A stretch of 64,000 bases of DNA from Pecten maximus (GCF_902652985.1 NC_047016.1:42842001-42906000); one strand, 5' to 3'. Shown: positions 1-52,790, counted from the first letter of the stretch. A program made the numbers and translations. The notes: generated by a model not told the origin, from the sequence alone.

Positions 1-600
1 GAACAACGTGAACACACTTGTAAAGGGAATAGCACTGGCTGTTGCTCCAAAGCCAGACTGTTGTCATGCATAGCACAGACTGTAGTCAAAAGCGGCGACA
101 AATGTGAAAGCAAGTCATATTATACTTGAGGTGGTTTCCGAATTCGGGATGTTTTCTGACATCGCAAATAGTCACACGGAATGTCGGATGAATTTATTAT
201 TCACACATCACCATTGATTTACATGCAGGTACCCACAATTAAGTTCAAACCCGAAATATGTTGCTGGGAACAACGGACGAAATGGCAAATGGCACCAATC
301 TACTACATTGACTTACTCTCGAAACAGCCCCAAGAGTGTCGCTTGTTCTATGAACACTTTCACACGTGGTAAACACATTGGTGATTCTAATTACACTCGC
401 ATTAATTAGTAGTCAGTAATTTAACTGCCATCACGCCGGACTGTTATTCATTTCCAAAGCACCGACTTATCGAAAACATGATTTCATATAAAAACACGGA
501 TTCATTTATAAGTTTGCGTTTCGTTAGCACGGAATAGAAATTTATAGACAGCTATACCAAAATAACACATACGTTTTGCTTTCAAAGATCTAGTAGCTTA

Positions 601-914
601 AGGGGCATTCCTTCGTTTGAGTAAAGTTTAGGTCGTCAAAATTAAACTTACTGGAAGATATACATTTTATCCAAGTAGTAAAAGTTATCATCTTTACATT
701 AATACGGTAGTTTTATTCTCAAGGTAAACCGAAGTTCTTCGAGTATTAAGTCCTGAAAGTTCTTAATTCGACCCGAAGTATCATGCCTTTTCCTGTATAT
801 TTCGGCGTTAATTTCATTACATGTAGGTACAAACACTTATATAATCATCGTTCGGACATATATTCCATTAATAGAAATTGTGTATTTCTGATGTCCGAAC
901 GAAGGAATGCCCCT
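601..914. mobile_element. Non-autonomous MITE, Kolobok-like
   Basis: Terminal inverted repeats aggggcattccttcgtt (601-617) and aacgaaggaatgcccct (898-914), flanked by tta/ttaa. AG...CT termini at a TTAA-like target fit Kolobok-type elements. Confidence 0.6.
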
Positions 915-1518
915 TTAAGTTCAACGTCCAGGACATGGCAAAAATGTATTTTTAAGTCAACCACTGAGCTTTATCTTATCAAGTTTTTCCAAAACCATCA
1001 TCTTAAACGGAGTATACTGTATTTAGCCCACTGTATTCAATAATCTTGTTGATTGGTCCAGACTGGCAGTCCCGTTATCTACCCTTATCCTAAGTACAGT
1101 GACCCCTTGGTATCTCAGTCCTTAAATTACTTCAGTTATTGATAGGATGTTCAACATTACTAAACCAAACCAAATCCTCGGTATCTGTGCAATATATCAC
1201 AAACTGATCACGTTATGTCTAAAAAAAAATCCAACTTTATGAGTTTATGTTCCAATTAATACGACACAGCGTAATTAAGGCCGTTGACTGTCGTTTGTAA
1301 CGCACATCAATAATCATATTAAACTTTTCCTCAAATTCGTATGACTTTTTATCTCGTTCATACGAGTTTTACCTCGCACGACTTTTTTTTTTATCTCATT
1401 TGTACGAGTTTTTATCTCGTTTAAATGCGTTTTTAACTCGCTCGTACAAGCACAACTTCATTGTTATTCATTAAATGTGAAACAAAAGTAAAACATGTTT
1501 ATTGAATTCTTTTCAGAA

Positions 1519-1962
1519 ATGACCCACGTGGCTGCATTCCTTCTGTGCTTATTTGTGACGTCAGTGGATTCACGAGCTGTATCACCTCATTTATGGAACT
1601 TAAACGGCCACGCCCATGTGCACCTATCCAGCCAACCGGGCGACCAAGTTCATAAACCTAGCACTTCCGTCGACAACGCCCCTAGACCACTTCAGACGTA
1701 TCTCCCAATTCACAAAGGGGATACAATCTGGATGGACGTTGTACTGGATGGTATACACATGGATGCCATCCCGGAAGTTTTTATCCCTATGGCCGTGTTA
1801 CGGGAAAGAAAGTCATTGTCGTCAAGTGTGTCCTCCAGGAGAGCACGCGACACGTCGGTGACCACGTACTGCGCGACACCGGAGTGTATGCATCTGATGC
1901 TGGAATATGAACATTGGAGGAATGAACATGGTTATCCAGACACTTATGGAAGATGGGGGTGA
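1519..1962 (+). CDS. Secreted prohormone-like precursor A (147 aa), predicted C-terminal 36-aa disulfide-ring RW-amide peptide
   Basis: Splice acceptor ttttcag ends at 1516, just before AAATG (ATG 1519), so the track start at 1495 is probably intronic. Signal peptide MTHVAAFLLCLFVTSVDS, furin-type site RRAR, then DTSVTTYCATPECMHLMLEYEHWRNEHGYPDTYGRW-G-stop, with the terminal Gly as amide donor. Confidence 0.8.
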   Translation: MTHVAAFLLCLFVTSVDSRAVSPHLWNLNGHAHVHLSSQPGDQVHKPSTSVDNAPRPLQTYLPIHKGDTIWMDVVLDGIHMDAIPEVFIPMAVLRERKSLSSSVSSRRARDTSVTTYCATPECMHLMLEYEHWRNEHGYPDTYGRWG

Positions 1963-2190
1963 TGTGATCGGGACGAAGTCGCGCTTTTCTGCCATTTGTG
2001 ACCTGAATTTATATCCAAATATTTTGATATCTTGATTGATCTGTAGCGATTGTGTACGGAAATGGAACGCTGTGCTAGTTATCGCCCCTGTTGTATAAAA
2101 TATAAAGCCATATAAAAATATATTCCAAATATATTGTGCCAGAAAATTATTTTGATAAATTTCATGTATAAATATGTAAGATAATTGTTT

Positions 2191-2614
2191 TATTGTGTCG
2201 CCTGCGAAAAGCAACACTATGTCGGCGTCGGCGGTGTCGGCGGCGTCGTCCGCACAAAGGTTTCCGTGTGATGACTCAAATTCCCTTGGCTGGATCAAAC
2301 TCAAACTTCAGGCAGATCTGCCTTGTCACAAGTGATTGCTTATGATTGCTTTTCAGGTCCGAAGGTCAAAGGTCAAGGTAATTGTTACTAAAAATAGAAA
2401 ATGTGTTTCCGTGCGTTAACTCAAGTTCCCTTGGGCCGATCAGACTCAAACTTGCAAACGTGCAGTTTTTCCTTACAAGTGTTTTCATGAGATTCCTTTA
2501 CTGGTCGAAAGGTCAAAGGTCAAGGGTACTCTTACTATAAATAGAAAATCTGTTTCCATCTCTAGTAATCACCTAACTTCTTGCGCGGGTGACACATCCA
2601 ATGGAAATCTAGTT
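2191..2614 (+). mobile_element. Helentron-associated non-autonomous element (HINE/pearl-like)
   Basis: Subterminal inverted repeat tgtgtcgcctgcg (2194-2206) / cgcgggtgacaca (2584-2596); (gtcggc)n microsatellite; two ~145-bp internal repeats carrying aaggtcaaaggtcaagg; short 3' hairpin and ctagtt end. Confidence 0.6.
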
Positions 2615-4084
2615 TAGTATAGTGCACGCCCCCCGTGCGTGCGTCCGTCCTTGATAGCGTTGTGTACACATGGACAGATTTCAGATTCACACCAGAACAT
2701 CACATCATCAAGGTCTACACCAGATTCTGTTTCGTTGGTCATCGGTCAGGATGAAAGGATGAAGATCACTCTTAACCACTTTGAAAATAAAAATTATGTT
2801 TATCCTATAAAACGACGTGATGTTGACTACACGATAGTGACGTGTTATGGCACAGACCGGGACATAAAATGATGTTAGAATTTACTCAACTGACACTTTA
2901 ACCGGACTGATTCCATAGTTACTGAAGCGGCGGACATGGAAGATGAAAAACAGCACAACCGAGCGCTCGGTAGGGTCCAACTCGAGAGAGCATTAATCCT
3001 AAAGATCTAAGGGTTCTATAGCCATCCTCTATCAAGGACATTTCTGAAACTCCCAGCCGTGTGTTGAAATCTCACAAGATTCAATGTTGTTTCAAACCAT
3101 CCAACAAATTAGGACAGAATCTTAAGAGGCCTAAAGACAAAACACACAAGAAAGACCTTAATACCTAGCTGCGATAACGTAGCTCTGGACGACGGACGGA
3201 CAATTTTTGACAGATGGTCGTCGTCAGAGCTACGATTCCCTCCCATTGCTCGTAATGTAGCAAAACCGTGAACCTCGAAAATGCTACAAATAGCGGATAT
3301 CGTTTAACTTTGGAGTAATAGTTCGTATAATTAAACATTTCTAATTCAATTTTGCAGTGTATTAGCCTACCGTCTTATCTAGAAATCTTTAATTCGCATA
3401 TTCTGATATCATACTGCTCGGAGTTGTCTCCGTGTCCGCCATGATACTTCTCGAAGAACTCTCGCGAGGATTCTAACCCAAATATGGAACCCGTGATCCA
3501 TATATGGATGAAGCTACTACGATAAATAAATACATAATCAGAGATATTTAACCACTCTTTTGTAACTCTTGTGAAGAAAGCGAATCTTACTTTGCGTAAT
3601 TAAATAATTTCAGAATGAATTGACCTTCCTTACCGAGATATATTACTCAGAATCTGTTTTTCTGTTGAAATCTCGCGGGAAACCTCATTAGCATCAATTT
3701 ATTTTGATTTCCTTATAAGGAAATTGACCTTTACACTTGTATCAAAGATGGCGGTATGTTTGAACTGATATCTCCGTGTGTCTTGCTCGTTTTGGATTTT
3801 ACTATTTATTGTCAAACATTTGAAGTAATGTGCAGGTTTGTTGCTTGAATATTCATAATAGATACCAGAATCATCAATTTACATGGGTTTTTTTATCCGA
3901 GAAAAAATTTACCACTGCTAATACTGCCCGATGTCAGAGACATATATATGTCTCTGCCGATGTGAATCACATCGGGGCTTGCTACACTATCGGCAATGGG
4001 AGGGACTTCATACCCTGCCGGAGAGCAGTGTAGGCAGGGTATGAATATTCGTTCTACCTTGAGCATAGACGACCTTGCTCAGTT

Positions 4085-4380
4085 TTATCCTCTGAGGTGG
4101 CCAAACATATCCATCTTGAATCCCCGGGTCATTCCATCGTCTTGGATGAGTTCCGTGTACTGGATGGTGGCCTGGGCTATATTGAACGTGGGATTCGGGA
4201 GGCCATTAACATCTGCCTGTACCAGCCGATCCTCAGCCAGGACAGGGGGAGATACCGACTACCAGGGGTCTATGACTCGCACCTGAGGTCACGTGTCCGA
4301 AAGGTCACGGGATCGCAGGTAAATCCACCTGGGTATAAGTCCTACTGAGGAAGATCACAGTAGTGGTCCAAATATCTAAG
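4085..4380 (+). mobile_element. Penelope-like element 3' fragment (GIY-YIG endonuclease C-terminus)
   Basis: Translation VAKHIHLESPGHSIVLDEFRVLDGGLGYIERGIREAINICLYQPILSQDRGRYRLPGVYD matches the typical PLE C-terminal pattern (ER..REAI.I....P.LN.D.G.Y.LP..Y). A hammerhead-like motif follows. Confidence 0.75.
4341..4380 (+). ncRNA. Degenerate minimal hammerhead ribozyme (PLE-associated)
   Basis: CTGAGGA (4345-4351), A, stem GATCAC-agta-GTGGTC, then CAAA in place of GAAA, then TATC. It sits right at the end of the PLE ORF. Confidence 0.5.
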
Positions 4381-4387
4381 TATGTAT

Positions 4388-4655
4388 TTCTCGAGATACA
4401 TTACGCTCTATACATTACACTCGAGATACATTACACTCTAGATACATTTCACTCGAGATACATTACACTCTAGATACATTTCACTCGAGATACACTACAC
4501 TCGAGATACATTACACTCGAGATACATTTCACGCGATTCATTACACTCGAAATTCATTGCTCGAGATACATTACACTCGAGCAACATTACACTCGATACA
4601 TTACTCGAAATACATTACACTCGATACATTACTCGGGATACATTACACTCGAGAT
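4388..4655. repeat. 16-bp minisatellite (cactcgagatacatta)n
   Basis: About 16 degenerate tandem copies visible directly. Confidence 0.9.
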
Positions 4656-5106
4656 ATGTGCGTGTTCATATTTTCTACATTGTCAATTAAGTTCAATAGC
4701 CTAACGTCACAACAGTGTTCCCATGGTGACACCGGGTTCATTTATATATATTTTGTCCATGTGTATAGATATTAACGGCGCATAACATCTGATTTAAAAT
4801 GAAAGATTTTCACAAATCATTATTGCTGTGAACACGTTGTTTATTATGGAATAATGTCCAATGTTAATTCTCATTATAAAGCGCGTACATGATAAAGCAA
4901 TGAGATTCAATTCAATATTTTCTTATTGACAAAAATATAGATAAAGTTATACATGTTATAATCCATTCAAAAGTGAACCCGAATTTACCTTTAAAGGGAT
5001 ACATTCAGAGAATACCACGATGCATTAAACCGCACAATTTTCATTTCTTCTTTGGTAGTGTTGGCGTCCTCGTGAAATTTCAAACAAAATAGATCTAAAC
5101 AATGGC

Positions 5107-5505
5107 TCATCGACGTCCAAAACTGCCTACTGCATCCGGATAGCTTGGATCTAACGAAAGCATATGGTCAATGCATTCCTGTGTTTGGCACCACGCTTCC
5201 GCCCCGTACTTCCGGTTTGTCCGTTTCCTATTGCGATATAGTCCAGAAAGATAACGATACAGGATTTTTTGTTTAGGTGAAAGGTTGGTGTTTTGTGGTC
5301 TTACTAAACCTATCCCAACAAATCTCCTCTTCCAAAATGGGATCTTGATGTGGGATCCCGGATAGGGCACGTGATGTCTCGCAGTAGCAGTTAAATTTAT
5401 CAGTTTAGATTTTTGGATTGTATCATCTTTACCACGAACTAAGGTGGAGTTCAATGGACAAATCCACACCGATAGCATGATCACTGAAAGAAAAGAAATC
5501 AGCAT
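5107..5505 (-). CDS. Secreted prohormone-like precursor B (132 aa), predicted C-terminal disulfide-ring F-amide peptide; paralog of precursor A
   Basis: Hydrophobic N-terminus MLISFLSVIMLSVWIC; basic sites KRR, RNRKR and RK; C-terminus YGAEAWCQTQECIDHMLSLDPSYPDAVGSF-GRR-stop (amidation signal). Candidate acceptor cag 10 nt upstream of the ATG; AATAAA on the minus strand at 4845-4840. Confidence 0.8.
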   Translation of the reverse strand: MLISFLSVIMLSVWICPLNSTLVRGKDDTIQKSKLINLTATARHHVPYPGSHIKIPFWKRRFVGIGLVRPQNTNLSPKQKILYRYLSGLYRNRKRTNRKYGAEAWCQTQECIDHMLSLDPSYPDAVGSFGRR

Positions 5506-6152
5506 ATAGCGTTACCTGTTCCAGCAACATTATTTTAATTTAGGAGAAAACATCTAAGTGACTGAATGCAAACAACAACAACAACAACAACAACAACAAA
5601 AAACAAAAAACAAACAAACAAACAAAAACAAACAAAAATTTAAAAAAGCTAGCAATGAATAAAAGTAGCTTAAAAATTACTATATCTTATCTTCAAATGA
5701 TCGAAAGTGAAAATTCATTCAGTGAACATTTGTCACGAAAAAACGGGACAAGTTTTATGTTATAATTCATGATCAATTAATTATACATTTACATATAAAT
5801 GTATAAATTATACATTTCATATAAAGGTTTAATTATGTTGAATGGTATAATTCATTATCAATTAATTATACAGTTATTGAGCAATATAACTTTTAATTAA
5901 CAAATAAATATGTAGTGAAATACTTACAGCAAACTGGCAGCATGATGGCTTGTAGCTCCATCGTGCATGTAAGGTCGAATTCAAATACATGTCGGTTCTG
6001 TAATGGGACATTACTGTACACACAGTGGTATAGGATCTCTAAGTGGACGTTTATGTTTGCTGATTGGTTTTCTTTGATAGTTCTTGATAAACAGGGTGCC
6101 GGTAGAGACAAACCCCAGGTAGTTTACAAATTGTACTTACTTTGGCGGTCTG

Positions 6153-6185
6153 TTTATGGAACGGGTTACGTATTTCGTGACGTCA
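6153..6185 (-). promoter_or_regulatory. Candidate promoter of precursor B: full CRE plus TATA-like box
   Basis: Palindromic TGACGTCA at 6178-6185 and CATAAA on the minus strand at 6158-6153. A minus-strand gtaagt donor near 5927 could end a non-coding first exon. Confidence 0.35.
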
Positions 6186-7030
6186 CACGATCGTGCTAGA
6201 GGAGGTATTTTCGGGCTAGTTTCAATGAATTTATCGGTTACTATAACAGGACGGTGGGTGAATACACCGGAAGTGGTCTGTTATCATCAAACTTAAACCT
6301 CCCACGATTCAGTGTGTTGGTTCGATCATGAATTCTTTGTTGTTTAAATTTAATGTGGATATAAGTGTTGATTTGTATAAATACAAATAACATCAGAATG
6401 GGTAATACTACGGGAAAAGTTAATAAAATACCACACAGGGTCAAAATGTCAAAACTTAACACAAATGGAATGAGAAGAGACTTAAGCTGTGTAGTCAACG
6501 TATCGGAAGGGCGCGGAATGCTGACATCATTACAAACGGAACTAACTTCCCCACTAACAATGGAAAGGTGGGGTTCAAGCCGATGTTAAATTTCCCGTCG
6601 ACATCACCAACACCCGAATTTCGTTCAAAGTTTGCATGTTTGTATAGCACTATGCATGGCAATACAAAATATACACTTGCTTATTCATCTTTTACATTGA
6701 AAAGGTCCAAATGGCCCAAATGTGCAGTGAATTGACGATATGTCACAACATGCCTAAATGATTAAGCGGAACATAGTTGATTTTTAACATTTTTAAAACC
6801 AGACTATCGCCCAAAAATTAAAATTAGAAAAAAAAAAAAAAAAAAAAACTTGCTACATGTATGATATAAGTTTTGTACACCATTCTGATTTATTTCAAAA
6901 TTAGCTTCAATATGTGTTCTATCACCAGGAAAATTTTGAAAAGAATTGAAATATGGGAATGTGGTTGTCGTACAGCTGAAACGCTAATGGTGCAAACTTT
7001 TGGATTTGAGAAAAGTGTCAACTAAGAGGG

Positions 7031-14619: not shown

Positions 14620-15765
14620 GCGTTATCTAGTATCATTAATATCCATACCTCATGAAAGAGTATTTTACCATATAAACCATATGCAATAGCCATTAAGTGT
14701 AATACTTATCCATACCTCATTAAAAAGAGTCTCACAGTATACAATAGTATCATACACTGTCATTATCATCCATACCTCATTAAAAAGAGTCTCACAGTAT
14801 ATTATAGTATCATACACTGTCATTATCATCCATACCTCATTAAAAGCTTTCTCATAGTATACAAAAGTATCATACACTGTCATTATCATCCATACCTCAT
14901 TAAAAGGTTTTTCATAGTATACAATAGTATCATACACTGTCATTATCATCCATACCTCATTAAAAGGTTTCTCATAGTATACAATAGTATCATACACTGT
15001 CATTATCATCCATACCTCATTAAAAGGTTTCTCATAGTATACAAAAGTATCATACACTGTCATTATCATCCATACCTCATTAAAAGGTTTCTCATAGTAT
15101 ACAATAGTATCATACACTGTCATTATCATCCATACCTCATTAAAAGGTTTCTCATAGTATACAAAAGTATCATACACTGTCATTATCATCCATACCTCAT
15201 TAAAAGGTTTCTCATAGTATACAAAAGTATCATAAAATGTCATAATTATCCATACCTCATTAAAAGTGTCATAGTACACAGTATTATCATAAAGTGCCAT
15301 AATTATCCATACCCCATTAAAACGTGTCACAGTATACAAAAGTATCATAAAATGACATAATTATCAATACCTCATTAAAAAGTTTCACACCGTCTACAAT
15401 AGTATCATTAAGTTTCATACATATCCATACCTCATTAAAACGTGTCGCACAGTATACAAAAGTATCATAAAATGTCATAATTATCCATACCTCATTAAAA
15501 AGTTTCATACCTTCTAAATAGTATCATTAAGTGTCATACTTATGCATACCTCATTTAAAAGGTGCACATGGTATGAAATAGTACGATTAAGTGTCATAAT
15601 TATCCATACCTCATTAAAAGTGTCACACAGTATAAAATCATATCATTCTGTGTCATACTTATCCATACCTCTTTAAGAACTGTCATAGTACACAGTATTA
15701 TCATAAAGTGTCATAATTATCCATACCTCATTAAAACGTCTAACACAATATACAATATTATCATT
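14620..15765. repeat. 60-bp minisatellite
   Basis: catacctcattaaaaggtttctcatagtatacaatagtatcatacactgtcattatcatc; near-perfect from 14701 to 15240, degenerate on the flanks. Confidence 0.95.
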
Positions 15766-34480: not shown

Positions 34481-35664
34481 AAGAAGAAAATCATAACAAA
34501 AAAGACAATAAAAGTCCCAATTTAGCCCCCTCTTACGAGCTGACGTGATGAGTATTCTCGTGGTAATGACCCTCCCCCCCCCCCCCCCCTAAAACCTACG
34601 ATAATTATATAATATCTCTGTTGTTGGTCTTCCTTTAATCTCGGACAACAGCAAGTAAACTTCTCCATGAAGTATAAAAACAAGATATTTATAACATGTA
34701 TTCAATTTGATACAATAGTAATGTGACATTATTATCTTTTTGATGGCAGCTTACCTGAAATGTTTTGTAAATCTGCATAAATAAACGTTTATAAAGCAGC
34801 ATGGATATCTATATCTAAATATCAACACAGAATTTTATAAAGTGAAAATGAGTAATAATGGTGTAATCGTACACCTCCTTCTGTAGTCACACAGAAGAGG
34901 GCGTTAACATACCTATTTGTATAGGTATGTCAGCGTAGGTGAACAGATACTATAGAGTATTAGGTATTCTCTAGATAATTACCTGTGTAATCGGATGCTG
35001 GTAGTATCTTGTAACAGTCAGGTAAGAAAGGTATGTACCCAGTCTCCGCGACTACATACATTGACATTCCAAGGTATAATCTGGAAACTGATATTAAGAC
35101 AAGATAATTCTTTATACAGGTGATAGCATTTAAAGGCTTCTACATTAGACCTCTTAGCAAATACTTAACATATGTTATATTATTGATGTACAAATTCTGA
35201 TTTTGTTTAATTACAGCGACGATTGTTTGTAATTATTTCTTTAAATTTTACCCGAATACTTTTTTTTATATATAACATAATTCCGGAGCCTCGGGAACAC
35301 TCCCATTACAGGACTCTTTTTACAGCTCATTTTCTTAGTCGTGTTTACAAATGAAGCGAGCGTGGTTGTGACTTGTTTAGGATGCTGCCGAATATGGCTA
35401 TCATATGCTGATAAATATACTATCTGCCTTGGCAAACGATGTATAACAGGTGTACCTGATATTTCCTCGCTTCAGTATATATTTCATGCAATAAATTTTG
35501 GTAGAAACATTCGTCCTACAAAATACGTATATCACCGCACAGTTACATAAGTTGTTGTGATAATATATTCAGGTTGATGAGATTAAGCAAGTCAGTATAT
35601 CCTAAGAGGATTTGTCCATTACGAACAAAATATAGAGTCTAATAGTGACAACATGTTTATATGT

Positions 35665-36588
35665 CCACATGTGGCTACCCTGTCATGTTTATGTTTCCTC
35701 GTGTGGCTACCCTGTCATGTTTGTGTTTCCTCGTGTGGTTACCCTGTCATGTTTGTGTTTCCTCGTGTGGTTACCCTGTCATGTTTGTGTTTCCTCATGT
35801 GGTTACCCTGTCATGTTTGTGTTTCCTCGTGTGGTTACCCTGTCATGTTTGTGTTTCCTCGTGTGGTTACCCTGTCATGTTTGTGTTTCCTCATGTGGTT
35901 ACCCTGTCATGTTTGTGTTTCCTCGTGTGGTTACCCTGTCATGTTTGTGTTTCCTCGTGTGGTTACCCTGTCATGTTTGTGTTTCCTCGTGTGGTTACCC
36001 TGTCATGTTTGTGTTTCCTCGTGTGGTTACCCTGTCATGTTTGTGTTTCCTCATGTGGTTACCCTGTCATGTTTGTGTTTCCTCGTGTGGTTACTCTGTC
36101 ATGTTTGTGTTTCCTCATGTGGTTACCCTGTCATGTTTGTGTTTCCTCGTGTGGTTACTCTGTCATGTTTGTGTTTCCTCATGTGGTTACCCTGTCATGT
36201 TTGTGTTTCCTCATGTGGTTACTCTGTCATGTTTGTGTTTCCTCGTGTGGTTACCCTGTCGTGTTTGTGTTTCCTCGTGTGGTTTCCCTGTCATGTTTGT
36301 GTTTCCTCGTGTGGTTACCCTGTCATGTTTATGTTTCCTCGTGTTGTTACCCTGTCATGTTTGTGTTTCCTCGTGTGGTTACCCTGTCATGTTTGTGTGT
36401 CCTCATGTGGTAACCCTGTCATGTTTGTGTTTCCTCGTGTGGTTACCCTGTCATGTTTGTGTTTCCTCGTGTGGTTACTCTGTCATGTTTGTGTTTCCTC
36501 ATGTAATTACCATGTCATGTTTGTGTTTCCTCGTGTGGTTTCCCTTCATGTTTGGGTTTCCTCAAGTGGTTTCCCTGTCATGTTTTTG
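35665..36588. repeat. 32-bp minisatellite (gtgtggttaccctgtcatgtttgtgtttcctc)n, intronic
   Basis: About 28 copies. It explains the three overlapping Cys-rich ORFs in the track. Confidence 0.97.
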
Positions 36589-36695
36589 TGTATAAGGCAT
36601 CCAGGTATGATATTTTATCTGCTTTTTTCAGCGATTGTTCACGTTTTTCTTTGAGGCCTCTCAATTATGTTGGACATCTTAATCTTTCATTGCAG

Positions 36696-44095: not shown

Positions 44096-44512
44096 TTAAA
44101 AATATGGATATAAACGCCATGATCGTTTGTCACCGTAACCTCGCTTATCCCAGAAGCCTCTTTTAAAGTCGTTTTGATGTGTTTGTTTGTCTTTTTTCAT
44201 GGCAGTATTCTCTGTGTCCAATACAGTGGGAACTATGCTTCTAAAAACAGATAAAAGTCCGGTGATTCCACTTTCCGGATCACTGGTTTCTCGTTTATCG
44301 CCGTATCCTCTTTTATCGCCGTATCCACGTTTGTCCCAGAATCCTCGTTTGAAATCTGATTCCTGCATAAATCTACCTTCTCTATCTTCAAAGTGTGTTG
44401 ACCGAAATTTTATTTGTGAGTCGTCTGATTGGTCGAGAATGCTTGCTTGGCACCTCCCCCAGAACATCGCTATGGTGATGACCAAAACGCACAGCCAATG
44501 GGATACATCAGC
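44096..44512 (-). CDS. Achatin-type neuropeptide precursor, main coding exon (GFWD x2, GYGD x3)
   Basis: Phase-0 acceptor tcttttttgcag|; signal core WLCVLVITIAMFWGRCQA; KR-flanked tetrapeptides G-[FY]-x-D, the achatin/GFFD/Ocp pattern. AATAAA on the minus strand at 44026-44021. Confidence 0.92.
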   Translation of the reverse strand, partial: ADVSHWLCVLVITIAMFWGRCQASILDQSDDSQIKFRSTHFEDREGRFMQESDFKRGFWDKRGYGDKRGYGDKRETSDPESGITGLLSVFRSIVPTVLDTENTAMKKDKQTHQNDFKRGFWDKRGYGDKRSWRLYPYF

Positions 44513-47086
44513 CTGCAAAAAGATAGTGCAGGAACATATACAGTACATGTAATTGTTTTCCGTTTATTGTCAAACATTTAAAGCATTTTAAAGGGACATT
44601 CTGCTCAAATTGAAAATGTTCTGTCTGCTCTGTCCCTTTAATAACACTTTTAATGGATTTTCTTTTCAAATGTCTGTCCTTTTTATGTTCAGTTCGTACA
44701 AGCGAAGTTGGTGGAAATATCCCATACAATTATAATATAAGACCGCATTCATCACGTGATGGCAAACAGAGTTGGTCATCGGCTAATGAAATATCGTGTA
44801 AATATGAAATTTCACACATAGATAAATTTTGTCTCCAAGTGTCCATTCTTACTTTCTCTGGCTTTATGGGACGGTTCAGTGTTCAGCTTGACCAGAAAAA
44901 ACTACCCCGATCTACAAGTTTTTTGGTAGAGTGATGATGTAAATCGAAAGCGAGGCGACATCAAAAACAGAGTATAGCAGGATTTTTTTTTCGGAACTTA
45001 ACGTAACGTGGCATTTAATAAGGAATAGACATAATCTTCAATTTGTTTTGTTAATTTTCTTGAAATCTGTCATTTACTTCAGCGAAGACTACCTTTTAAG
45101 CAAGACTACAAATGATATATATGCGCATATGACACGTTATTGGTATGCATGAAAAATCATTTGTAGTTAAATAATAACCACCGATAATGACTTGTTGCTG
45201 TTCGGGAGGCGCCATATTTGTTTGTGGTCATAGCACAAGCGCAAACCTATTGTAACGTTATCGGAAAGGCGAACATTTGTAAGTCAATCTAGCTTATACT
45301 CTAGAAAATACTATATTAATATTATAAAAATCATCGTATGAAATCCATGAGTGTCCAAACTATCCCTTTAAAATCTTGATCACTATTGCAATCGCTACAT
45401 TTTTTAACATTTCGCATTGTTGGACTAACATTCTCCAATCGGTGACCAAGTTTATTGCAATACCAACATTACGAAATGAAGGGAAGCAACTCTGTTTTAT
45501 CACAATGTTAGACTACATGTGGTCCCTGTGGAAACTCTTAATGGAGGCCAGGAAAATCAAAATAGCTTGAGTAGGTTTTTTTAATGTAAATGGGAAGGAC
45601 ATAAAGCGTTTAATTTGATCAATTTCGTGGTTTTGTATATTGATAAATTTTAAAACAACATTGATTTCAGGTGGCTATACTGTAACTATACTGTAACTAT
45701 ACTGTAACTATACTGTAACTATGCTGTAGTTAAGCCGCACTTTCTTAGCTTTTATATTTTCGTTATGTTTGATACATGTTGTATATGGAATTGAACTTTT
45801 AACTGAAACTTGTTTTTTTATGTTAGATTGAATTGAACTTGCATATGAATAATGTTTTATATACCAAATTGGATTGAAGTTGCATATAAATCTTGTTTTA
45901 TACATTAGATTGATGCAACTTGTTTTGTATATTAAATTTAATTGATCTTGTTTATAGATAATGTTTTGTTTATTGAATCGAATTGAACTTGCATATGAAT
46001 CATGTTTTATACATTAAATTGGATTGAACTTGGATGTGAATCATGTTTTATCTATAAAACTGAATTTAACGTACATATGAGCCATGTTTTATTTGTCATT
46101 CTTGTCATTTTTACTACGCATTCAATTTGTTGCCATATCATATCGTATCATATCCAATAGTTCGCCTGCTAATATTCGGTCGAGATTTCTAATCATGATA
46201 GTATTAATTTCATTAGGAAATATATTCATCTTTAAAACAAACAGATTGAAAAATGCTTGCAAGCTATCGAAACCATTTGTTCCATTTGTGAAGCAAAAAG
46301 TGAAACTTCAATCATCCATTTCTAAAGGGGCATATTCTGAGGGACAGGGGATGTTTTTTATCTAGTCTTTCCTAATATCATCTGCTTATCGTTAATATTG
46401 GAACATATTAATAAAAAAAACGTATATATCTCCAATATAGTCAAAATATATAAAATGTAATTCACATTACCGGGGTCAATACACAAGAACATAGAGGAAG
46501 CAATGAGAAGACAAAAAATGTGTGAATCCAGGTTTTTTCTTGTCCGACATGTAACCCGGCAACACATGTGGCAACCGACATTATATGTAGCAATATGATT
46601 ACCTGACCACCATTTTTTTCAGCAAATAACTCTGTGATTATACGAAGAACTTGTCTTTTCATGAAACAGTCATTAGAATTGAAGATATGGGGCTGGTATC
46701 CAGTATATAATATAATACTCCACTTATATTTTTGGACCGTTATGTATGTTTGTATTTGTATTATCATCAAAGCACTTATGTAATAATAATTGTACAATAA
46801 AAATGAATCCATTTGAGTTGAATTATCAATGTGAACTGGAATAAGAACACACGTGAATTTGTTAATTAAGTGTTTCTTAATGCATACACTTACATCCACT
46901 CGAAATATCATGCATACAGTGTATATGGTATTAGGGTAGCATGGAAAACAGATCCACACTTTCAAAGTACCAACACTTCCGTGTAATACATAAACATATA
47001 TATATGTTCACACAAAAACCAAATACACATATGTAATTATAGGTTCTAATATTTGGATTTATGATACATATTTGGTGCCGTATATC

Positions 47087-51475: not shown

Positions 51476-51892
51476 ATGTTTTTGTTTTTGCTTTCGAAAC
51501 TAATTCTTCTAAAATCTGCCTTAAAAATATGGATATAAACGCCATGATCGTTTGTCACCGTAACCTCGCTTATCCCAGAAGCCTCTTTTAAAGTCGTTTT
51601 GATGTGTTTGTTTGTCTTTTTTCATGGCAGTATTCTCTGTGTCCAATACAGTGGGAACTATGCTTCTAAAAACAGATAAAAGTCCGGTGATTCCACTTTC
51701 CGGATCACTGGTTTCTCGTTTATCGCCGTATCCTCTTTTATCGCCGTATCCACGTTTGTCCCAGAATCCTCGTTTGAAATCTGATTCCTGCATAAATCTA
51801 CCTTCTCTATCTTCAAAGTGTGTTGACCGAAATTTTATTTGTGAGTCGTCTGATTGGTCGAGAATGCTTGCTTGGCACCTCCCCCAGAACAT
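51476..51892 (-). pseudogene. Partial duplicate of the achatin exon (no signal peptide, no acceptor, no polyA signal)
   Basis: Appears identical to 44051-44467 (offset 7425). It breaks at MFWGR and abuts a 22-bp satellite. Confidence 0.75.
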
Positions 51893-52790
51893 ACGGTTGA
51901 AGCTTACCATACTTGTTAGATAGCTGAACCATGCTTGTTTGATAGCTGAACCATACTTGTTAGATAGCTGAACCATACTTGTTAGATAGCTGAACTGGGC
52001 TTGTTATATGGCTGAACCATACTTGTTTATATGAAGATCTGTTAGACTGATACTTGTTTATGCGATAGCTTGAACCATACTTGTTAGATAGCTGAACCAT
52101 ACTTGTTATATAGCTGAACTATACTTGTTATATAGCTGAACTATACTTGTTATATAGCTTAACCATACTTGTTAGATAGCTGAACCATACTTGTTAGTAG
52201 CTGAACTTGTTATATAGCGACAACTTGTGATATACTGAACCAACTTGTTATAGCTGATACTAGACTATGTTAGATAGCTGAACCATACTTGTTAGATAGC
52301 TGAACCATACTTGTTATATAGCTGAACCATACTTGTTATATAGCTGAACCATACTTGTTAGATAGCTGAACCATAGTTGTTATATAGCTGAACTGGGCTT
52401 GTTATATAGCTGAACCATACTTGTTATATAGCTGAACCATACTTGTTATATAGCTGAACCATACTTGTTATATAGCTGAACCATACGTGTTATATAGCTG
52501 AACCATACTTGTTATATAGCTGAACCATGCTTTTTATATAGCTGAACCATGCTTGATATATAGCTGAACCATACTTGTTAGATAGCTGAACCATACTTGT
52601 TATATAGCTGAACCATACTTGTTATATAGCTGAACCATACTTGTTATATAGCTGAACCATACTTGTTAGATAGCTGAACCATACTTGTTATGTAGCTGAA
52701 CCATACTTGTTATATAGCTGAACCATACTTGTTATATAGCTGAACCATACTTGTTATATAGCTGAACCATACGTGTTATATAGCTGAACC
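51893..52790. repeat. 22-bp minisatellite (tagctgaaccatacttgttata)n
   Basis: About 40 copies, indel-rich around 52020-52270. Confidence 0.95.

What the first reader, a model, noticed from the sequence alone, without database searches (positions are those of the whole stretch)
5107..5230. Precursor B peptide resembles vertebrate CGRP at both ends
Human alpha-CGRP is ACDTATCVTHRLA...VPTNVGSKAF-NH2, followed by GRR in its precursor. Peptide B is WCQTQECIDHMLS...YPDAVGSF-GRR. Shared features: a C-x4-C ring with Thr at the same position, C-[VI]-x-H-x-L after the ring, and P-x-x-V-G-S then Phe-amide at the end. Known protostome calcitonin-type peptides usually end in Pro-amide, and CGRP is regarded as vertebrate-specific. 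Inference: either a divergent calcitonin/CGRP-superfamily ligand for a class B GPCR, or convergence. The peptide is shorter than CGRP, has Glu at the conserved Thr6 position, and short-motif similarity can arise by chance.
Basis: partly seen in the sequence, partly recalled or inferred. Interest (0 to 1): 0.8.

Follow-up and report, generated by a model that had tools for sequence, protein, structure and literature searches.

The report
Scallop ring-amide peptide, CGRP look-alike
This is a real, expressed king-scallop gene for a small secreted precursor whose tail should yield a disulfide-ringed, amidated peptide of an unnamed scallop-restricted family; its likeness to vertebrate CGRP is most likely coincidence or convergence, not kinship.

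Summary
The sequence is there as described. On the minus strand, 5107-5230 encodes ...NRKRTNRKYGAEAWCQTQECIDHMLSLDPSYPDAVGSFGRR*, the C-terminus of Pecten maximus LOC117322160 (136 aa).

The gene is real. Spliced transcript contigs occur in four runs from four studies, and one carries a poly(A) tail. The intron is 5484-5927 and an AATAAA signal lies at 4845-4840.

A convergent neighbour gene (LOC117322159, ORF 1495-1962 on the plus strand) ends in a paralogous peptide. One further relative exists, of unknown species. The three share [WY]-C-x-T-x-E-C-[IM]-x-x-M-[LV]...P-[DE]-x-x-G-x-[FW]-Gly.

CT/CGRP membership is not supported:
- Pfam, including Calc_CGRP_IAPP, gave no hit at E<=10.
- Sequence and profile searches of all PDB chains gave no hit at E<=10.
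- There is no similarity to the scallop's own canonical calcitonin-type peptide, which lies on another chromosome and ends in Pro-amide.
- The peptide has Glu where the finding places CGRP's conserved Thr6.
- It spans only 24 residues from the first Cys.
- His, Val and Ser, three of the CGRP-like residues, are not conserved in the paralogue.

Best reading: a new lineage-restricted prohormone family with a convergent or chance CGRP likeness. Receptor use is untested. An earlier scan note (s1-794524) had already flagged the paralogous pair.

The parts
5928..6146 (-). Gene B (Pecten maximus LOC117322160) exon 1: 5' UTR plus the first 34 coding bases (ATG at 5961; MELQAIMLPVC plus 1 base, phase-1 junction)
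   Evidence: Transcript contigs in 4 runs join 5928 to 5483. The resulting model equals the database protein P0001.
5484..5927 (-). Intron of gene B (444 bases, GT..AG on the minus strand), containing an (AAC)n microsatellite at about 5569-5638
   Evidence: Joint 5483/5928, 'skips 444, ends CT..AC' on the plus strand, in all four runs. Tandem repeats.
4826..5483 (-). Gene B exon 2: the rest of the coding sequence (5483-5110), stop codon 5109-5107, and 3' UTR to the poly(A) site at 4826
   Evidence: Contigs cover 4826-5483. A loose end of 21 T before 4826 in run X4 corresponds to a poly(A) tail on the minus strand.
4840..4845 (-). AATAAA polyadenylation signal, 14 bases upstream of the poly(A) site
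   Evidence: TTTATT on the plus strand at 4840-4845; poly(A) site.
5302..5349 (-). Second conserved block of the precursor, IKIPFWKRRFVGIGLV (codons 57-72). Possibly a second product or a structural or sorting segment.
   Evidence: 13 of 16 residues are identical in relative P0003 (IKIPFWKGRFVGTGFV). Coordinates derived from the coding sequence built.
5209..5229 (-). Basic processing sites RKR (codons 97-99) and RK (codons 102-103) upstream of the peptide
   Evidence: Read from the sequence. Cleavage itself is inferred, not shown.
5119..5208 (-). Predicted mature peptide B, YGAEAWCQTQECIDHMLSLDPSYPDAVGSF (30 aa if cut after RK), expected to carry Phe-amide
   Evidence: Sequence. The AWCQTQECIDHM stretch is identical in P0003. 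Only one non-synonymous variant (S125N, at a variable linker position) was seen across four runs.
5173..5190 (-). The C-x4-C ring (Cys110-Cys115; CQTQEC). C, T, E and C are invariant in all three family members.
   Evidence: Alignments A2 and A3. The disulfide bond is inferred.
5110..5118 (-). Gly-Arg-Arg: amidation donor plus dibasic site, directly before the stop codon at 5107-5109
   Evidence: Sequence. P0003 ends Gly-Arg and paralogue A ends in Gly.
1516..1962 (+). Paralogue gene A (LOC117322159), last exon: the ORF ends ...RRAR-DTSVTTYCATPECMHLMLEYEHWRNEHGYPDTYGRWG-stop. Its first exon lies outside 1-3000. A and B are transcribed convergently.
   Evidence: tblastn of B against the window; ORF; database protein P0002. 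A transcript contig covers 1515-1959, starts at the splice acceptor, and has 91 further bases that map elsewhere.
1849..1959 (+). Predicted peptide A (36 aa plus the Gly amide donor), expected to end in Trp-amide
   Evidence: Pairwise BLASTP of A against B gives E=0.002 over the C-terminal 32 residues. In the whole genome the family profile finds only A and B.

Best explanation
Window 4826-6146 (minus strand) is Pecten maximus gene LOC117322160, a two-exon gene for a 136-aa secreted precursor.

Shown: the gene is transcribed, spliced and polyadenylated. It has a hydrophobic N-terminal leader. Its best-conserved parts are a mid-precursor block and the C-terminal 30 residues.

Inferred: after signal-peptide removal, prohormone convertases cut at RKR/RK and at the terminal Gly-Arg-Arg. 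A carboxypeptidase trims the basic residues and peptidylglycine alpha-amidating monooxygenase converts Gly into a Phe-amide. Cys110 and Cys115 close a six-residue ring. The product is a peptide of about 30 residues (YGAEAW-[CQTQEC]-IDHMLSLDPSYPDAVGSF-NH2) that most likely signals through a still unknown receptor.

Together with the convergently oriented neighbour LOC117322159 (predicted Trp-amide peptide) and one relative from an unidentified transcriptome, it forms a small, apparently scallop-restricted family. The family signature is [WY]-C-x-T-x-E-C-[IM]-x-x-M-[LV]-x(5-10)-[YH]-P-[DE]-x-x-G-x-[FW]-amide. It is not a member of the calcitonin/CGRP family, and the two-ended likeness to CGRP is coincidence or convergence.
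For: Gene reality:
- Spliced contigs occur in 4 runs from 4 studies, and run X4 carries a poly(A) tail.
- The model equals NCBI XP_033732820.1.
- The leader is hydrophobic.

Family:
- Paralogue A was found by tblastn; pairwise E=0.002.
- Both genes have a phase-1 intron inside the leader.
- phmmer against 1.84 billion representative proteins returned only the gene itself and P0003 (E=5e-12).
- A profile word search returned only these three proteins.
- A motif scan and a profile scan of the whole 918-Mb genome returned only A and B as open, plausible copies.
- The language-model atlas puts both precursors among a mix of neuropeptide precursors with no consistent family.

Not CT/CGRP:
- Pfam gave 0 hits at E<=10 for precursors and peptides.
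- PDB chains gave 0 hits at E<=10 by sequence and by profile.
- The scallop's own canonical calcitonin-type peptide lies on contig C10, not C2: TCKVEVGGTCRTEWASSIADQYYYLLGPHSP followed by GRRRRR. It shows no alignment to B at E<=100 by BLASTP and 0.3% probability by hhalign.
- Published scallop, mussel and oyster CT-type peptides are 31-33 aa. They have [TS]-C right after the cleavage site and end in Pro-amide.
Against: - The feature-by-feature match to the CGRP fragments is rare under shuffling, so pure chance is not a comfortable explanation either.
- The ring, the Thr in the ring, the Pro and Gly near the end and the aromatic amide are conserved across the family.
- DH31 (the arthropod CT-type) precursors appear among the atlas neighbours of both proteins (0.89 and 0.79), though mixed with many unrelated neuropeptide families.
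- Processing, amidation, the disulfide bond and neural or endocrine expression are all inferred. No peptidomic or tissue data were available.
- The Pfam model is weak evidence: it also failed to find the genuine scallop CT genes in a whole-genome scan.
- Only three family sequences exist, and one (P0003) lacks a leader and has no known species.
Confidence: 0.7

Rival explanations
1. Functional convergence. Peptide B is not homologous to CGRP but has converged on it (ring, short helix, aromatic amide). It acts on a scallop calcitonin-receptor-like class B GPCR and/or is the molecule behind old reports of CGRP-like material and CGRP binding sites in molluscs.
For: The two-ended match to the CGRP fragments is rare under shuffling. 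The low-confidence model puts a short helix at residues 113-122, starting inside the ring. I116, M119 and L120 would form one hydrophobic face (my reading). Binding sites for CT/CGRP-like peptides in bivalve gill and mantle are cited in PMC7200681. From memory and unverified here: 1990s radioimmunoassay papers from the Fouchereau-Peron group reported a CGRP-like molecule in Pecten maximus. A VGSF-amide end could plausibly cross-react with antisera raised against the C-terminus of CGRP.
Against: The peptide has only 24 residues from the first Cys, against 31-33 for the published bivalve CT-type peptides. It has an N-terminal extension before the ring. It has an invariant Glu where the finding places CGRP's conserved Thr6. 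The structure model is poor (pLDDT 38). The scallop already has canonical CT-type ligands. I could not find the Pecten CGRP-like papers in the library.
Confidence: 0.1
2. True homology. A and B are highly divergent paralogues of the calcitonin/CGRP/DH31 superfamily that kept the ring and the amidated end.
For: An N-terminal-region disulfide ring plus C-terminal amide, carried on a precursor with the peptide near the C-terminus, is the CT-family layout. DH31 precursors appear among the atlas neighbours of both proteins.
Against: All sequence and profile tests are at background. There is no Pro-amide, and a Glu sits where the finding places CGRP's conserved Thr6. CGRP is the exception to the otherwise conserved C-terminal amidated Pro of CT-type peptides (PMC12638048), and all published bivalve CT-type peptides end in Pro-amide. 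From general knowledge, CGRP's own C-terminus therefore looks derived within vertebrates, so sharing it cannot be ancestral. No relatives were found outside scallops among 1.84 billion representative proteins. The locus is on a different chromosome-scale contig from the CT gene.
Confidence: 0.05
3. Not a processed peptide hormone. The 136-aa product acts as a small secreted protein (for example in defence, shell or mantle secretion, or gamete function), and the basic sites and terminal Gly-Arg-Arg are incidental.
For: No tissue or peptidomic data were obtained. The gene's peptide motifs were not found in the supplementary sequences of the 63-precursor ganglion neuropeptide catalogue of the related Yesso scallop. 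The conserved mid-precursor block suggests more than a spacer. The KRR site inside that block is KGR in P0003.
Against: Conservation is concentrated in exactly the segment bounded by basic sites and the Gly amide donor, in all three members. The rest of the precursor is poorly conserved and predicted to be disordered. The atlas neighbours are neuropeptide precursors.
Confidence: 0.15

Closest known systems
Vertebrate CGRP (calcitonin/CGRP/amylin/adrenomedullin family; Pfam PF00214 Calc_CGRP_IAPP)
   Same: C-x4-C ring with Thr at ring position 3. A hydrophobic residue, His and Leu at +1, +3 and +5 after the ring. P-x-x-V-G-S near the end. Phe-amide made from Gly plus Arg-Arg. The peptide lies near the C-terminus of a short precursor.
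   Different: Five to seven residues precede the ring. An invariant Glu sits where the finding places CGRP's conserved Thr6. The C-terminal match needs a 2-residue gap. His, Val and Ser are not conserved in the paralogue. There is no HMM, profile or BLAST signal.
Bivalve calcitonin/DH31-type peptides (scallop Py-CT1/CT2, oyster Cragi-CT, mussel CALC I/II)
   Same: Disulfide ring in the N-terminal part, a C-terminal amide, dibasic processing, and presence in the same animal.
   Different: The canonical peptides start [TS]-C immediately after KR, have C-x6 to C-x8 rings, are 31-33 aa long and end in Ser-Pro-amide. The P. maximus copy on contig C10 has no detectable similarity to B.
Other C-x4-C ring peptides of molluscs (conopressin; urotensin II-like peptide)
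   Same: A six-residue disulfide ring. Conopressin is amidated. The urotensin II-like peptide sits at the C-terminal end of its precursor, and UTS2B precursors are among the atlas neighbours.
   Different: Scallop conopressin is CFIRNCPPG-amide; from general knowledge, conopressins come directly after the signal peptide and are followed by neurophysin. In urotensin II the ring is at the very C-terminus and the peptide is not amidated (general knowledge). No sequence similarity was detected.
CCWamide / agatoxin-like peptides
   Same: A short precursor with a single C-terminal Cys-containing peptide ending in an amidated aromatic residue. Paralogue A would end in Trp-amide.
   Different: CCWamide/ALP peptides have eight conserved Cys and three-exon genes (PMC8557429). 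A and B have two Cys. Rejected.

Membership tests
Calcitonin/CGRP superfamily (Pfam PF00214; CT-type peptides in general) | Significant match to the family's sequence model or to any member | tested here: not met
   Pfam hmmscan gave 0 families at E<=10 for P0001, P0002, P0003 and both C-terminal peptides. phmmer and profile hmmsearch against all PDB chains gave 0 hits at E<=10. Caveat: PF00214 also missed the genuine scallop CT genes in the genome scan, so this test has low power for protostome members.
Calcitonin/CGRP superfamily | [quoted passage not shown] | tested here: inconclusive
   A C-x4-C ring is present and invariant. However, it is preceded by 5-7 residues after the nearest basic site. 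The real N-terminus is unknown without mass spectrometry.
Calcitonin/CGRP superfamily | Thr immediately before the second ring Cys (the 'conserved Thr6 position' named in the finding) | tested here: not met
   Glu in all three family members: CQTQEC, CQTQEC, CATPEC.
Calcitonin/CGRP superfamily | Length of about 31-37 residues, with an amphipathic helix between the ring and the C-terminal receptor-binding end | tested here: not met
   24 residues from the first Cys in B and P0003, and 29 in A. Only a ~10-residue helix is predicted, at low confidence (pLDDT about 50).
Protostome and invertebrate CT-type peptides | C-terminal amidated Pro | tested here: not met
   B and P0003 end Phe-Gly and A ends Trp-Gly. 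Scallop, mussel, oyster and echinoderm CT-type peptides end in Pro-amide.
Protostome and invertebrate CT-type peptides | Similarity to the same species' canonical CT-type peptide | tested here: not met
   BLASTP found no alignment at E<=100. hhalign of the family profile gave probability 0.3% against the P. maximus CT exon found on contig C10.
Calcitonin/CGRP superfamily | Activates a CTR/CLR-type class B GPCR | not testable with these tools
   Needs synthetic peptide and receptor assays.
Secreted amidated peptide prohormone (general kind) | Expressed mRNA, N-terminal signal sequence, basic cleavage sites flanking a conserved segment, and Gly amide donor before basic residues or the stop codon | tested here: met
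   expression, leader hydrophobicity; conservation confined to the flanked segment. No dedicated signal-peptide predictor was available. Processing is not shown experimentally.
CCWamide / agatoxin-like peptide | Eight conserved Cys in the mature peptide | tested here: not met
   There are two Cys only. The family definition is from PMC8557429.

The most novel reading that the evidence does not exclude
Peptide B is a convergently evolved, miniaturised CGRP mimic. On this reading it is the endogenous scallop ligand of a calcitonin-receptor-like class B GPCR, or at least the unidentified 'CGRP-like' immunoreactive material and binding partner reported in molluscs decades ago. That would mean a CGRP-style ring plus Phe-amide pharmacophore arose independently in a protostome alongside the canonical Pro-amide calcitonin-type peptides.
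Probability: 0.1. Interest if true: 0.7.

Novelty: new member of a known kind. Interest (0 to 1): 0.35.

Why it matters
Molluscan neuropeptide catalogues still turn up lineage-restricted orphan families. This one is absent from the published Yesso-scallop and oyster lists that I could search, and it is annotated only as 'uncharacterized protein'. Naming it adds two ligand candidates for orphan scallop receptors.

The CGRP likeness has a practical consequence. A VGSF-amide end might cross-react with anti-CGRP sera, so it offers a concrete and cheaply testable explanation for old reports of CGRP-like material in molluscs.

It does not change the view that CGRP proper is a vertebrate invention.

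Tried and rejected
- CCWamide identity for paralogue A (it would end in Trp-amide). Rejected: that family has eight Cys.
- Yesso-scallop 'GWamide' and the other 12 'novel' scallop precursors. I searched the supplementary sequences for the family's motifs and found no counterpart.
- Oyster urotensin II-like and other new oyster precursors. Nothing similar is described.
- More paralogues. A degenerate DNA pattern for C-x-T-x-E-C-[IM]-x-x-M gave six genome hits. Two are A and B. The others have stops or no amide signal. The profile scan gave only A and B.
- PF00214 scan of the whole genome. Nothing was found, but the genuine CT genes were missed too, so the result is uninformative.
- PF27927 (the DH31 family named by the atlas). 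Not in the local Pfam library.
- Structure prediction. Mean pLDDT was 38, too poor for a fold search.
The first atlas call failed on the exon-2 ORF.
- The 1990s papers on CGRP-like molecules in Pecten maximus. Not found in the library.
- CGRP sequence. The comparison with CGRP rests on the fragments quoted in the finding and on database searches.
- Spliced model. I sent no self-joined spliced model to a search. Searches used the exon-2 ORF by reference or the database's own record P0001. In one search a script joined the exons, and only to number codons for the variants.

Full report
**What is at the coordinates**

The window comes from Pecten maximus. The two ORFs match NCBI proteins XP_033732820.1 (LOC117322160) and XP_033732818.1 (LOC117322159), both 'uncharacterized protein'.

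The minus strand of 5107-5230 encodes NRKRTNRKYGAEAWCQTQECIDHMLSLDPSYPDAVGSFGRR followed by a stop codon. This is the C-terminus of a 132-codon ORF (5107-5505).

**The gene is real**

I laid the contigs of four public runs from four studies on 900-6500. Each run held a contig covering about 4826-5483 joined directly to 5928-6146. The 444 skipped bases end CT..AC on the plus strand, which is GT..AG on the minus strand. In run X4 a run of T precedes 4826, which corresponds to a poly(A) tail on the minus strand. An AATAAA signal lies 14 bases upstream of that site, at 4845-4840.

The spliced model starts at ATG 5961. It reads MELQAIMLPVC|LIMLSVWICPLNS..., which is identical to database protein P0001, and it has a hydrophobic leader.

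Eight coding variants were seen among the runs. Five are synonymous. The only non-synonymous one inside the peptide, S125N, falls at a linker position that also varies between relatives.

**A family of three**

- **Paralogue A.** A tblastn of the ORF against the window found a second peptide at 1867-1959 on the plus strand. It is the end of ORF 1495-1962...RRAR-DTSVTTYCATPECMHLMLEYEHWRNEHGYPDTYGRWG-stop. This is gene A, transcribed towards gene B. Pairwise BLASTP of A against B gives E=0.002 over the last 32 residues. A transcript contig begins exactly at A's splice acceptor (1515) and carries 91 further bases from an exon outside the stretch. Both genes therefore have a short first exon and a phase-1 intron within the leader.
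- **Relative P0003.** phmmer against 1.84 billion representative proteins found only one other relative, P0003 (E=5e-12, 112 aa). It comes from a Logan assembly, has no species label and lacks a leader. It ends ...QRFYQAWCQTQECIDHMVNWEHTHPEPIGNFGR.
- **No others.** The word-index search with a three-sequence profile found nothing more. A motif scan and a profile scan of the whole 918-Mb genome found only A and B.

The family signature is [WY]-C-x-T-x-E-C-[IM]-x-x-M-[LV], a linker of 5-10 residues, then [YH]-P-[DE]-x-x-G-x-[FW]-Gly. A second conserved block, IKIPFWK[RG]RFVG[IT]G[LF]V, lies mid-precursor.

Absence from other molluscs means absence of annotated protein relatives at E<=0.001. Small unannotated genes could have been missed.

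**How it most likely works**

Conservation is confined to a segment bounded by basic sites and a Gly amide donor. The rest of the precursor is poorly conserved and predicted to be disordered (atlas pLDDT 0.49 and 0.40; my model 38).

The standard route for such a precursor is signal peptidase, prohormone convertase, carboxypeptidase and then the amidating enzyme. That would release a peptide of about 30 residues with a Cys110-Cys115 ring and a Phe-amide end. Gene A would give a 36-residue Trp-amide peptide. All of these processing steps are inferred.

The low-confidence model places a short helix at residues 113-122, starting inside the ring.

The language-model atlas puts both precursors among a mixture of neuropeptide precursors: Frey, DH31, kisspeptin, NPFF, UTS2B, CCK, NPS, PDH, galanin, CAPA and NPY. 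That fits 'a neuropeptide-like precursor' but points to no single family.

**Testing the CGRP idea**

1. *HMM scores.* Pfam, which includes Calc_CGRP_IAPP, gave no hit at E<=10 for any precursor or peptide. phmmer of the peptide and hmmsearch of the family profile against all PDB chains also gave nothing at E<=10. I assume that set includes CGRP, amylin, adrenomedullin and calcitonin chains. The Pfam model is a weak test for protostomes because it also missed the genuine scallop CT genes.

2. *Comparison with the scallop's own CT gene.* Because of that weakness I located a canonical CT-type exon in this genome. I searched with a short C-terminal motif taken from the Yesso-scallop paper. It lies on contig C10 and reads KR-TCKVEVGGTCRTEWASSIADQYYYLLGPHSP-GRRRRR. 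BLASTP of peptide B against it finds nothing at E<=100, and hhalign of the family profile gives 0.3% probability.

3. *Conservation in relatives.* P0003 keeps AWCQTQECIDHM exactly. It has Val for the Leu, and P-E-P-I-G-N-F for P-D-A-V-G-S-F. Paralogue A has C-M-H-L-M-L and P-D-T-Y-G-R-W. Of the residues shared with the CGRP fragments, only the two Cys, the ring Thr, Pro, Gly and the aromatic amide are family-invariant. Conversely, the family's own invariant residues have no CGRP counterpart: the aromatic residue before the ring, the Glu before the second Cys and the Met at +4. The same holds for the acidic residue (Asp or Glu) after Pro.

4. *Defining features.* Published CT-type peptides of scallop, mussel, oyster and echinoderms are 31-33 residues or longer, and they end in Pro-amide. 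The bivalve peptides begin [TS]-C right after the cleavage site. CGRP is the noted exception to Pro-amide. All published bivalve CT-type peptides end in Pro-amide. From general knowledge, CGRP's C-terminus therefore looks like a vertebrate derivation, so a scallop peptide cannot share it by descent.

Peptide B has 24 residues from the first Cys and a 5-7 residue extension before the ring. It has Glu where the finding places CGRP's conserved Thr6.

**Chance or convergence?**

With both Cys and the last Phe fixed, shuffles reproduce the four N-terminal features in 2e-5 of trials and P..VGS in 1.5e-4. Those features were picked after seeing the match, so this overstates significance.

My hand BLOSUM62 score for the 12-residue N-terminal match is 35, half of it from the two Cys. 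That gives a pairwise E of about 0.004 before correcting for all the peptides a reader can recall and all the windows scanned.

The likeness is real but not demonstrably beyond coincidence, and homology is the least likely source. Functional convergence cannot be excluded. Binding sites for CT/CGRP-like peptides in bivalve gill and mantle are cited in PMC7200681. I also recall 1990s radioimmunoassay reports of a CGRP-like molecule in Pecten maximus itself, but I could not find them in the library, so this is unverified.

**Limits**

- There are no tissue labels for the runs.
- I searched with no self-joined spliced model. Only the exon-2 ORF by reference and the database record P0001 were used. 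A script joined the exons solely to number codons.
- An earlier scan note on this window (s1-794524) describes the same convergent paralogous pair. I had already found the pair.

**Verdict**

The prohormone reading is supported. CT/CGRP membership is not supported.

This is a new, apparently scallop-restricted member of the ordinary class of ring-containing amidated peptide precursors. It carries a curious CGRP look-alike motif that is worth one receptor assay and one immunoassay.

Noticed in passing
window 44096-44548 (-) and 51521-51976 (-): Two ORFs are near-identical from ...MFWGRCQASILDQ onwards. Each contains KR-flanked GFWD and GYGD units (FKRGFWDKRGYGDKRGYGDKR...). These are the achatin peptides listed for the Yesso scallop in PMC5996578. 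They look like a tandem duplication of the achatin precursor gene, about 7.4 kb apart and about 40 kb from the A/B pair.
   Followed up: partly
window 3164-4057: This stretch has very high contig depth in all four runs, with many loose ends at 3164-3168 and 4052-4057. Several joints skip about 794-817 bases between about 3206-3226 and about 4016-4033. That is the behaviour of a multi-copy, transcribed repeat with internally deleted copies (a transposon or MITE-like element) sitting between genes A and B.
   Followed up: no
window 4390-4656: A 16-bp minisatellite (CTCGAGATACATTACA, about 17.6 copies, 78% matches) lies just downstream of gene B's poly(A) site.
   Followed up: no
window 14665-15348 (-) and 35645-36654 (+): Long ORFs made of tandem repeats (units such as YEKPFNEVWMIMTVYDT..., and VWLPCHVCVSSCGYPVMFVFPRVVTLSCLCFL open in three frames). 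They are most likely minisatellite arrays rather than genes.
   Followed up: no
L013 (G000:C10:10854872-10857897), about 1411-1600 (+): The last exon of the canonical P. maximus calcitonin-type precursor (CT1b-like peptide ending HSP-GRRRRR) was found with a short motif from the Yesso-scallop paper. The Pfam Calc_CGRP_IAPP model did not detect it in the genome scan.
   Followed up: partly
L007 (G000:C11:530830) and L008 (G000:C3962:104319): Two similar repeat copies contain ...CRNKCNNECKTSECIHSM.... They match the ring motif pattern by chance. One has an in-frame TGA, and neither has an amidation signal.
   Followed up: yes
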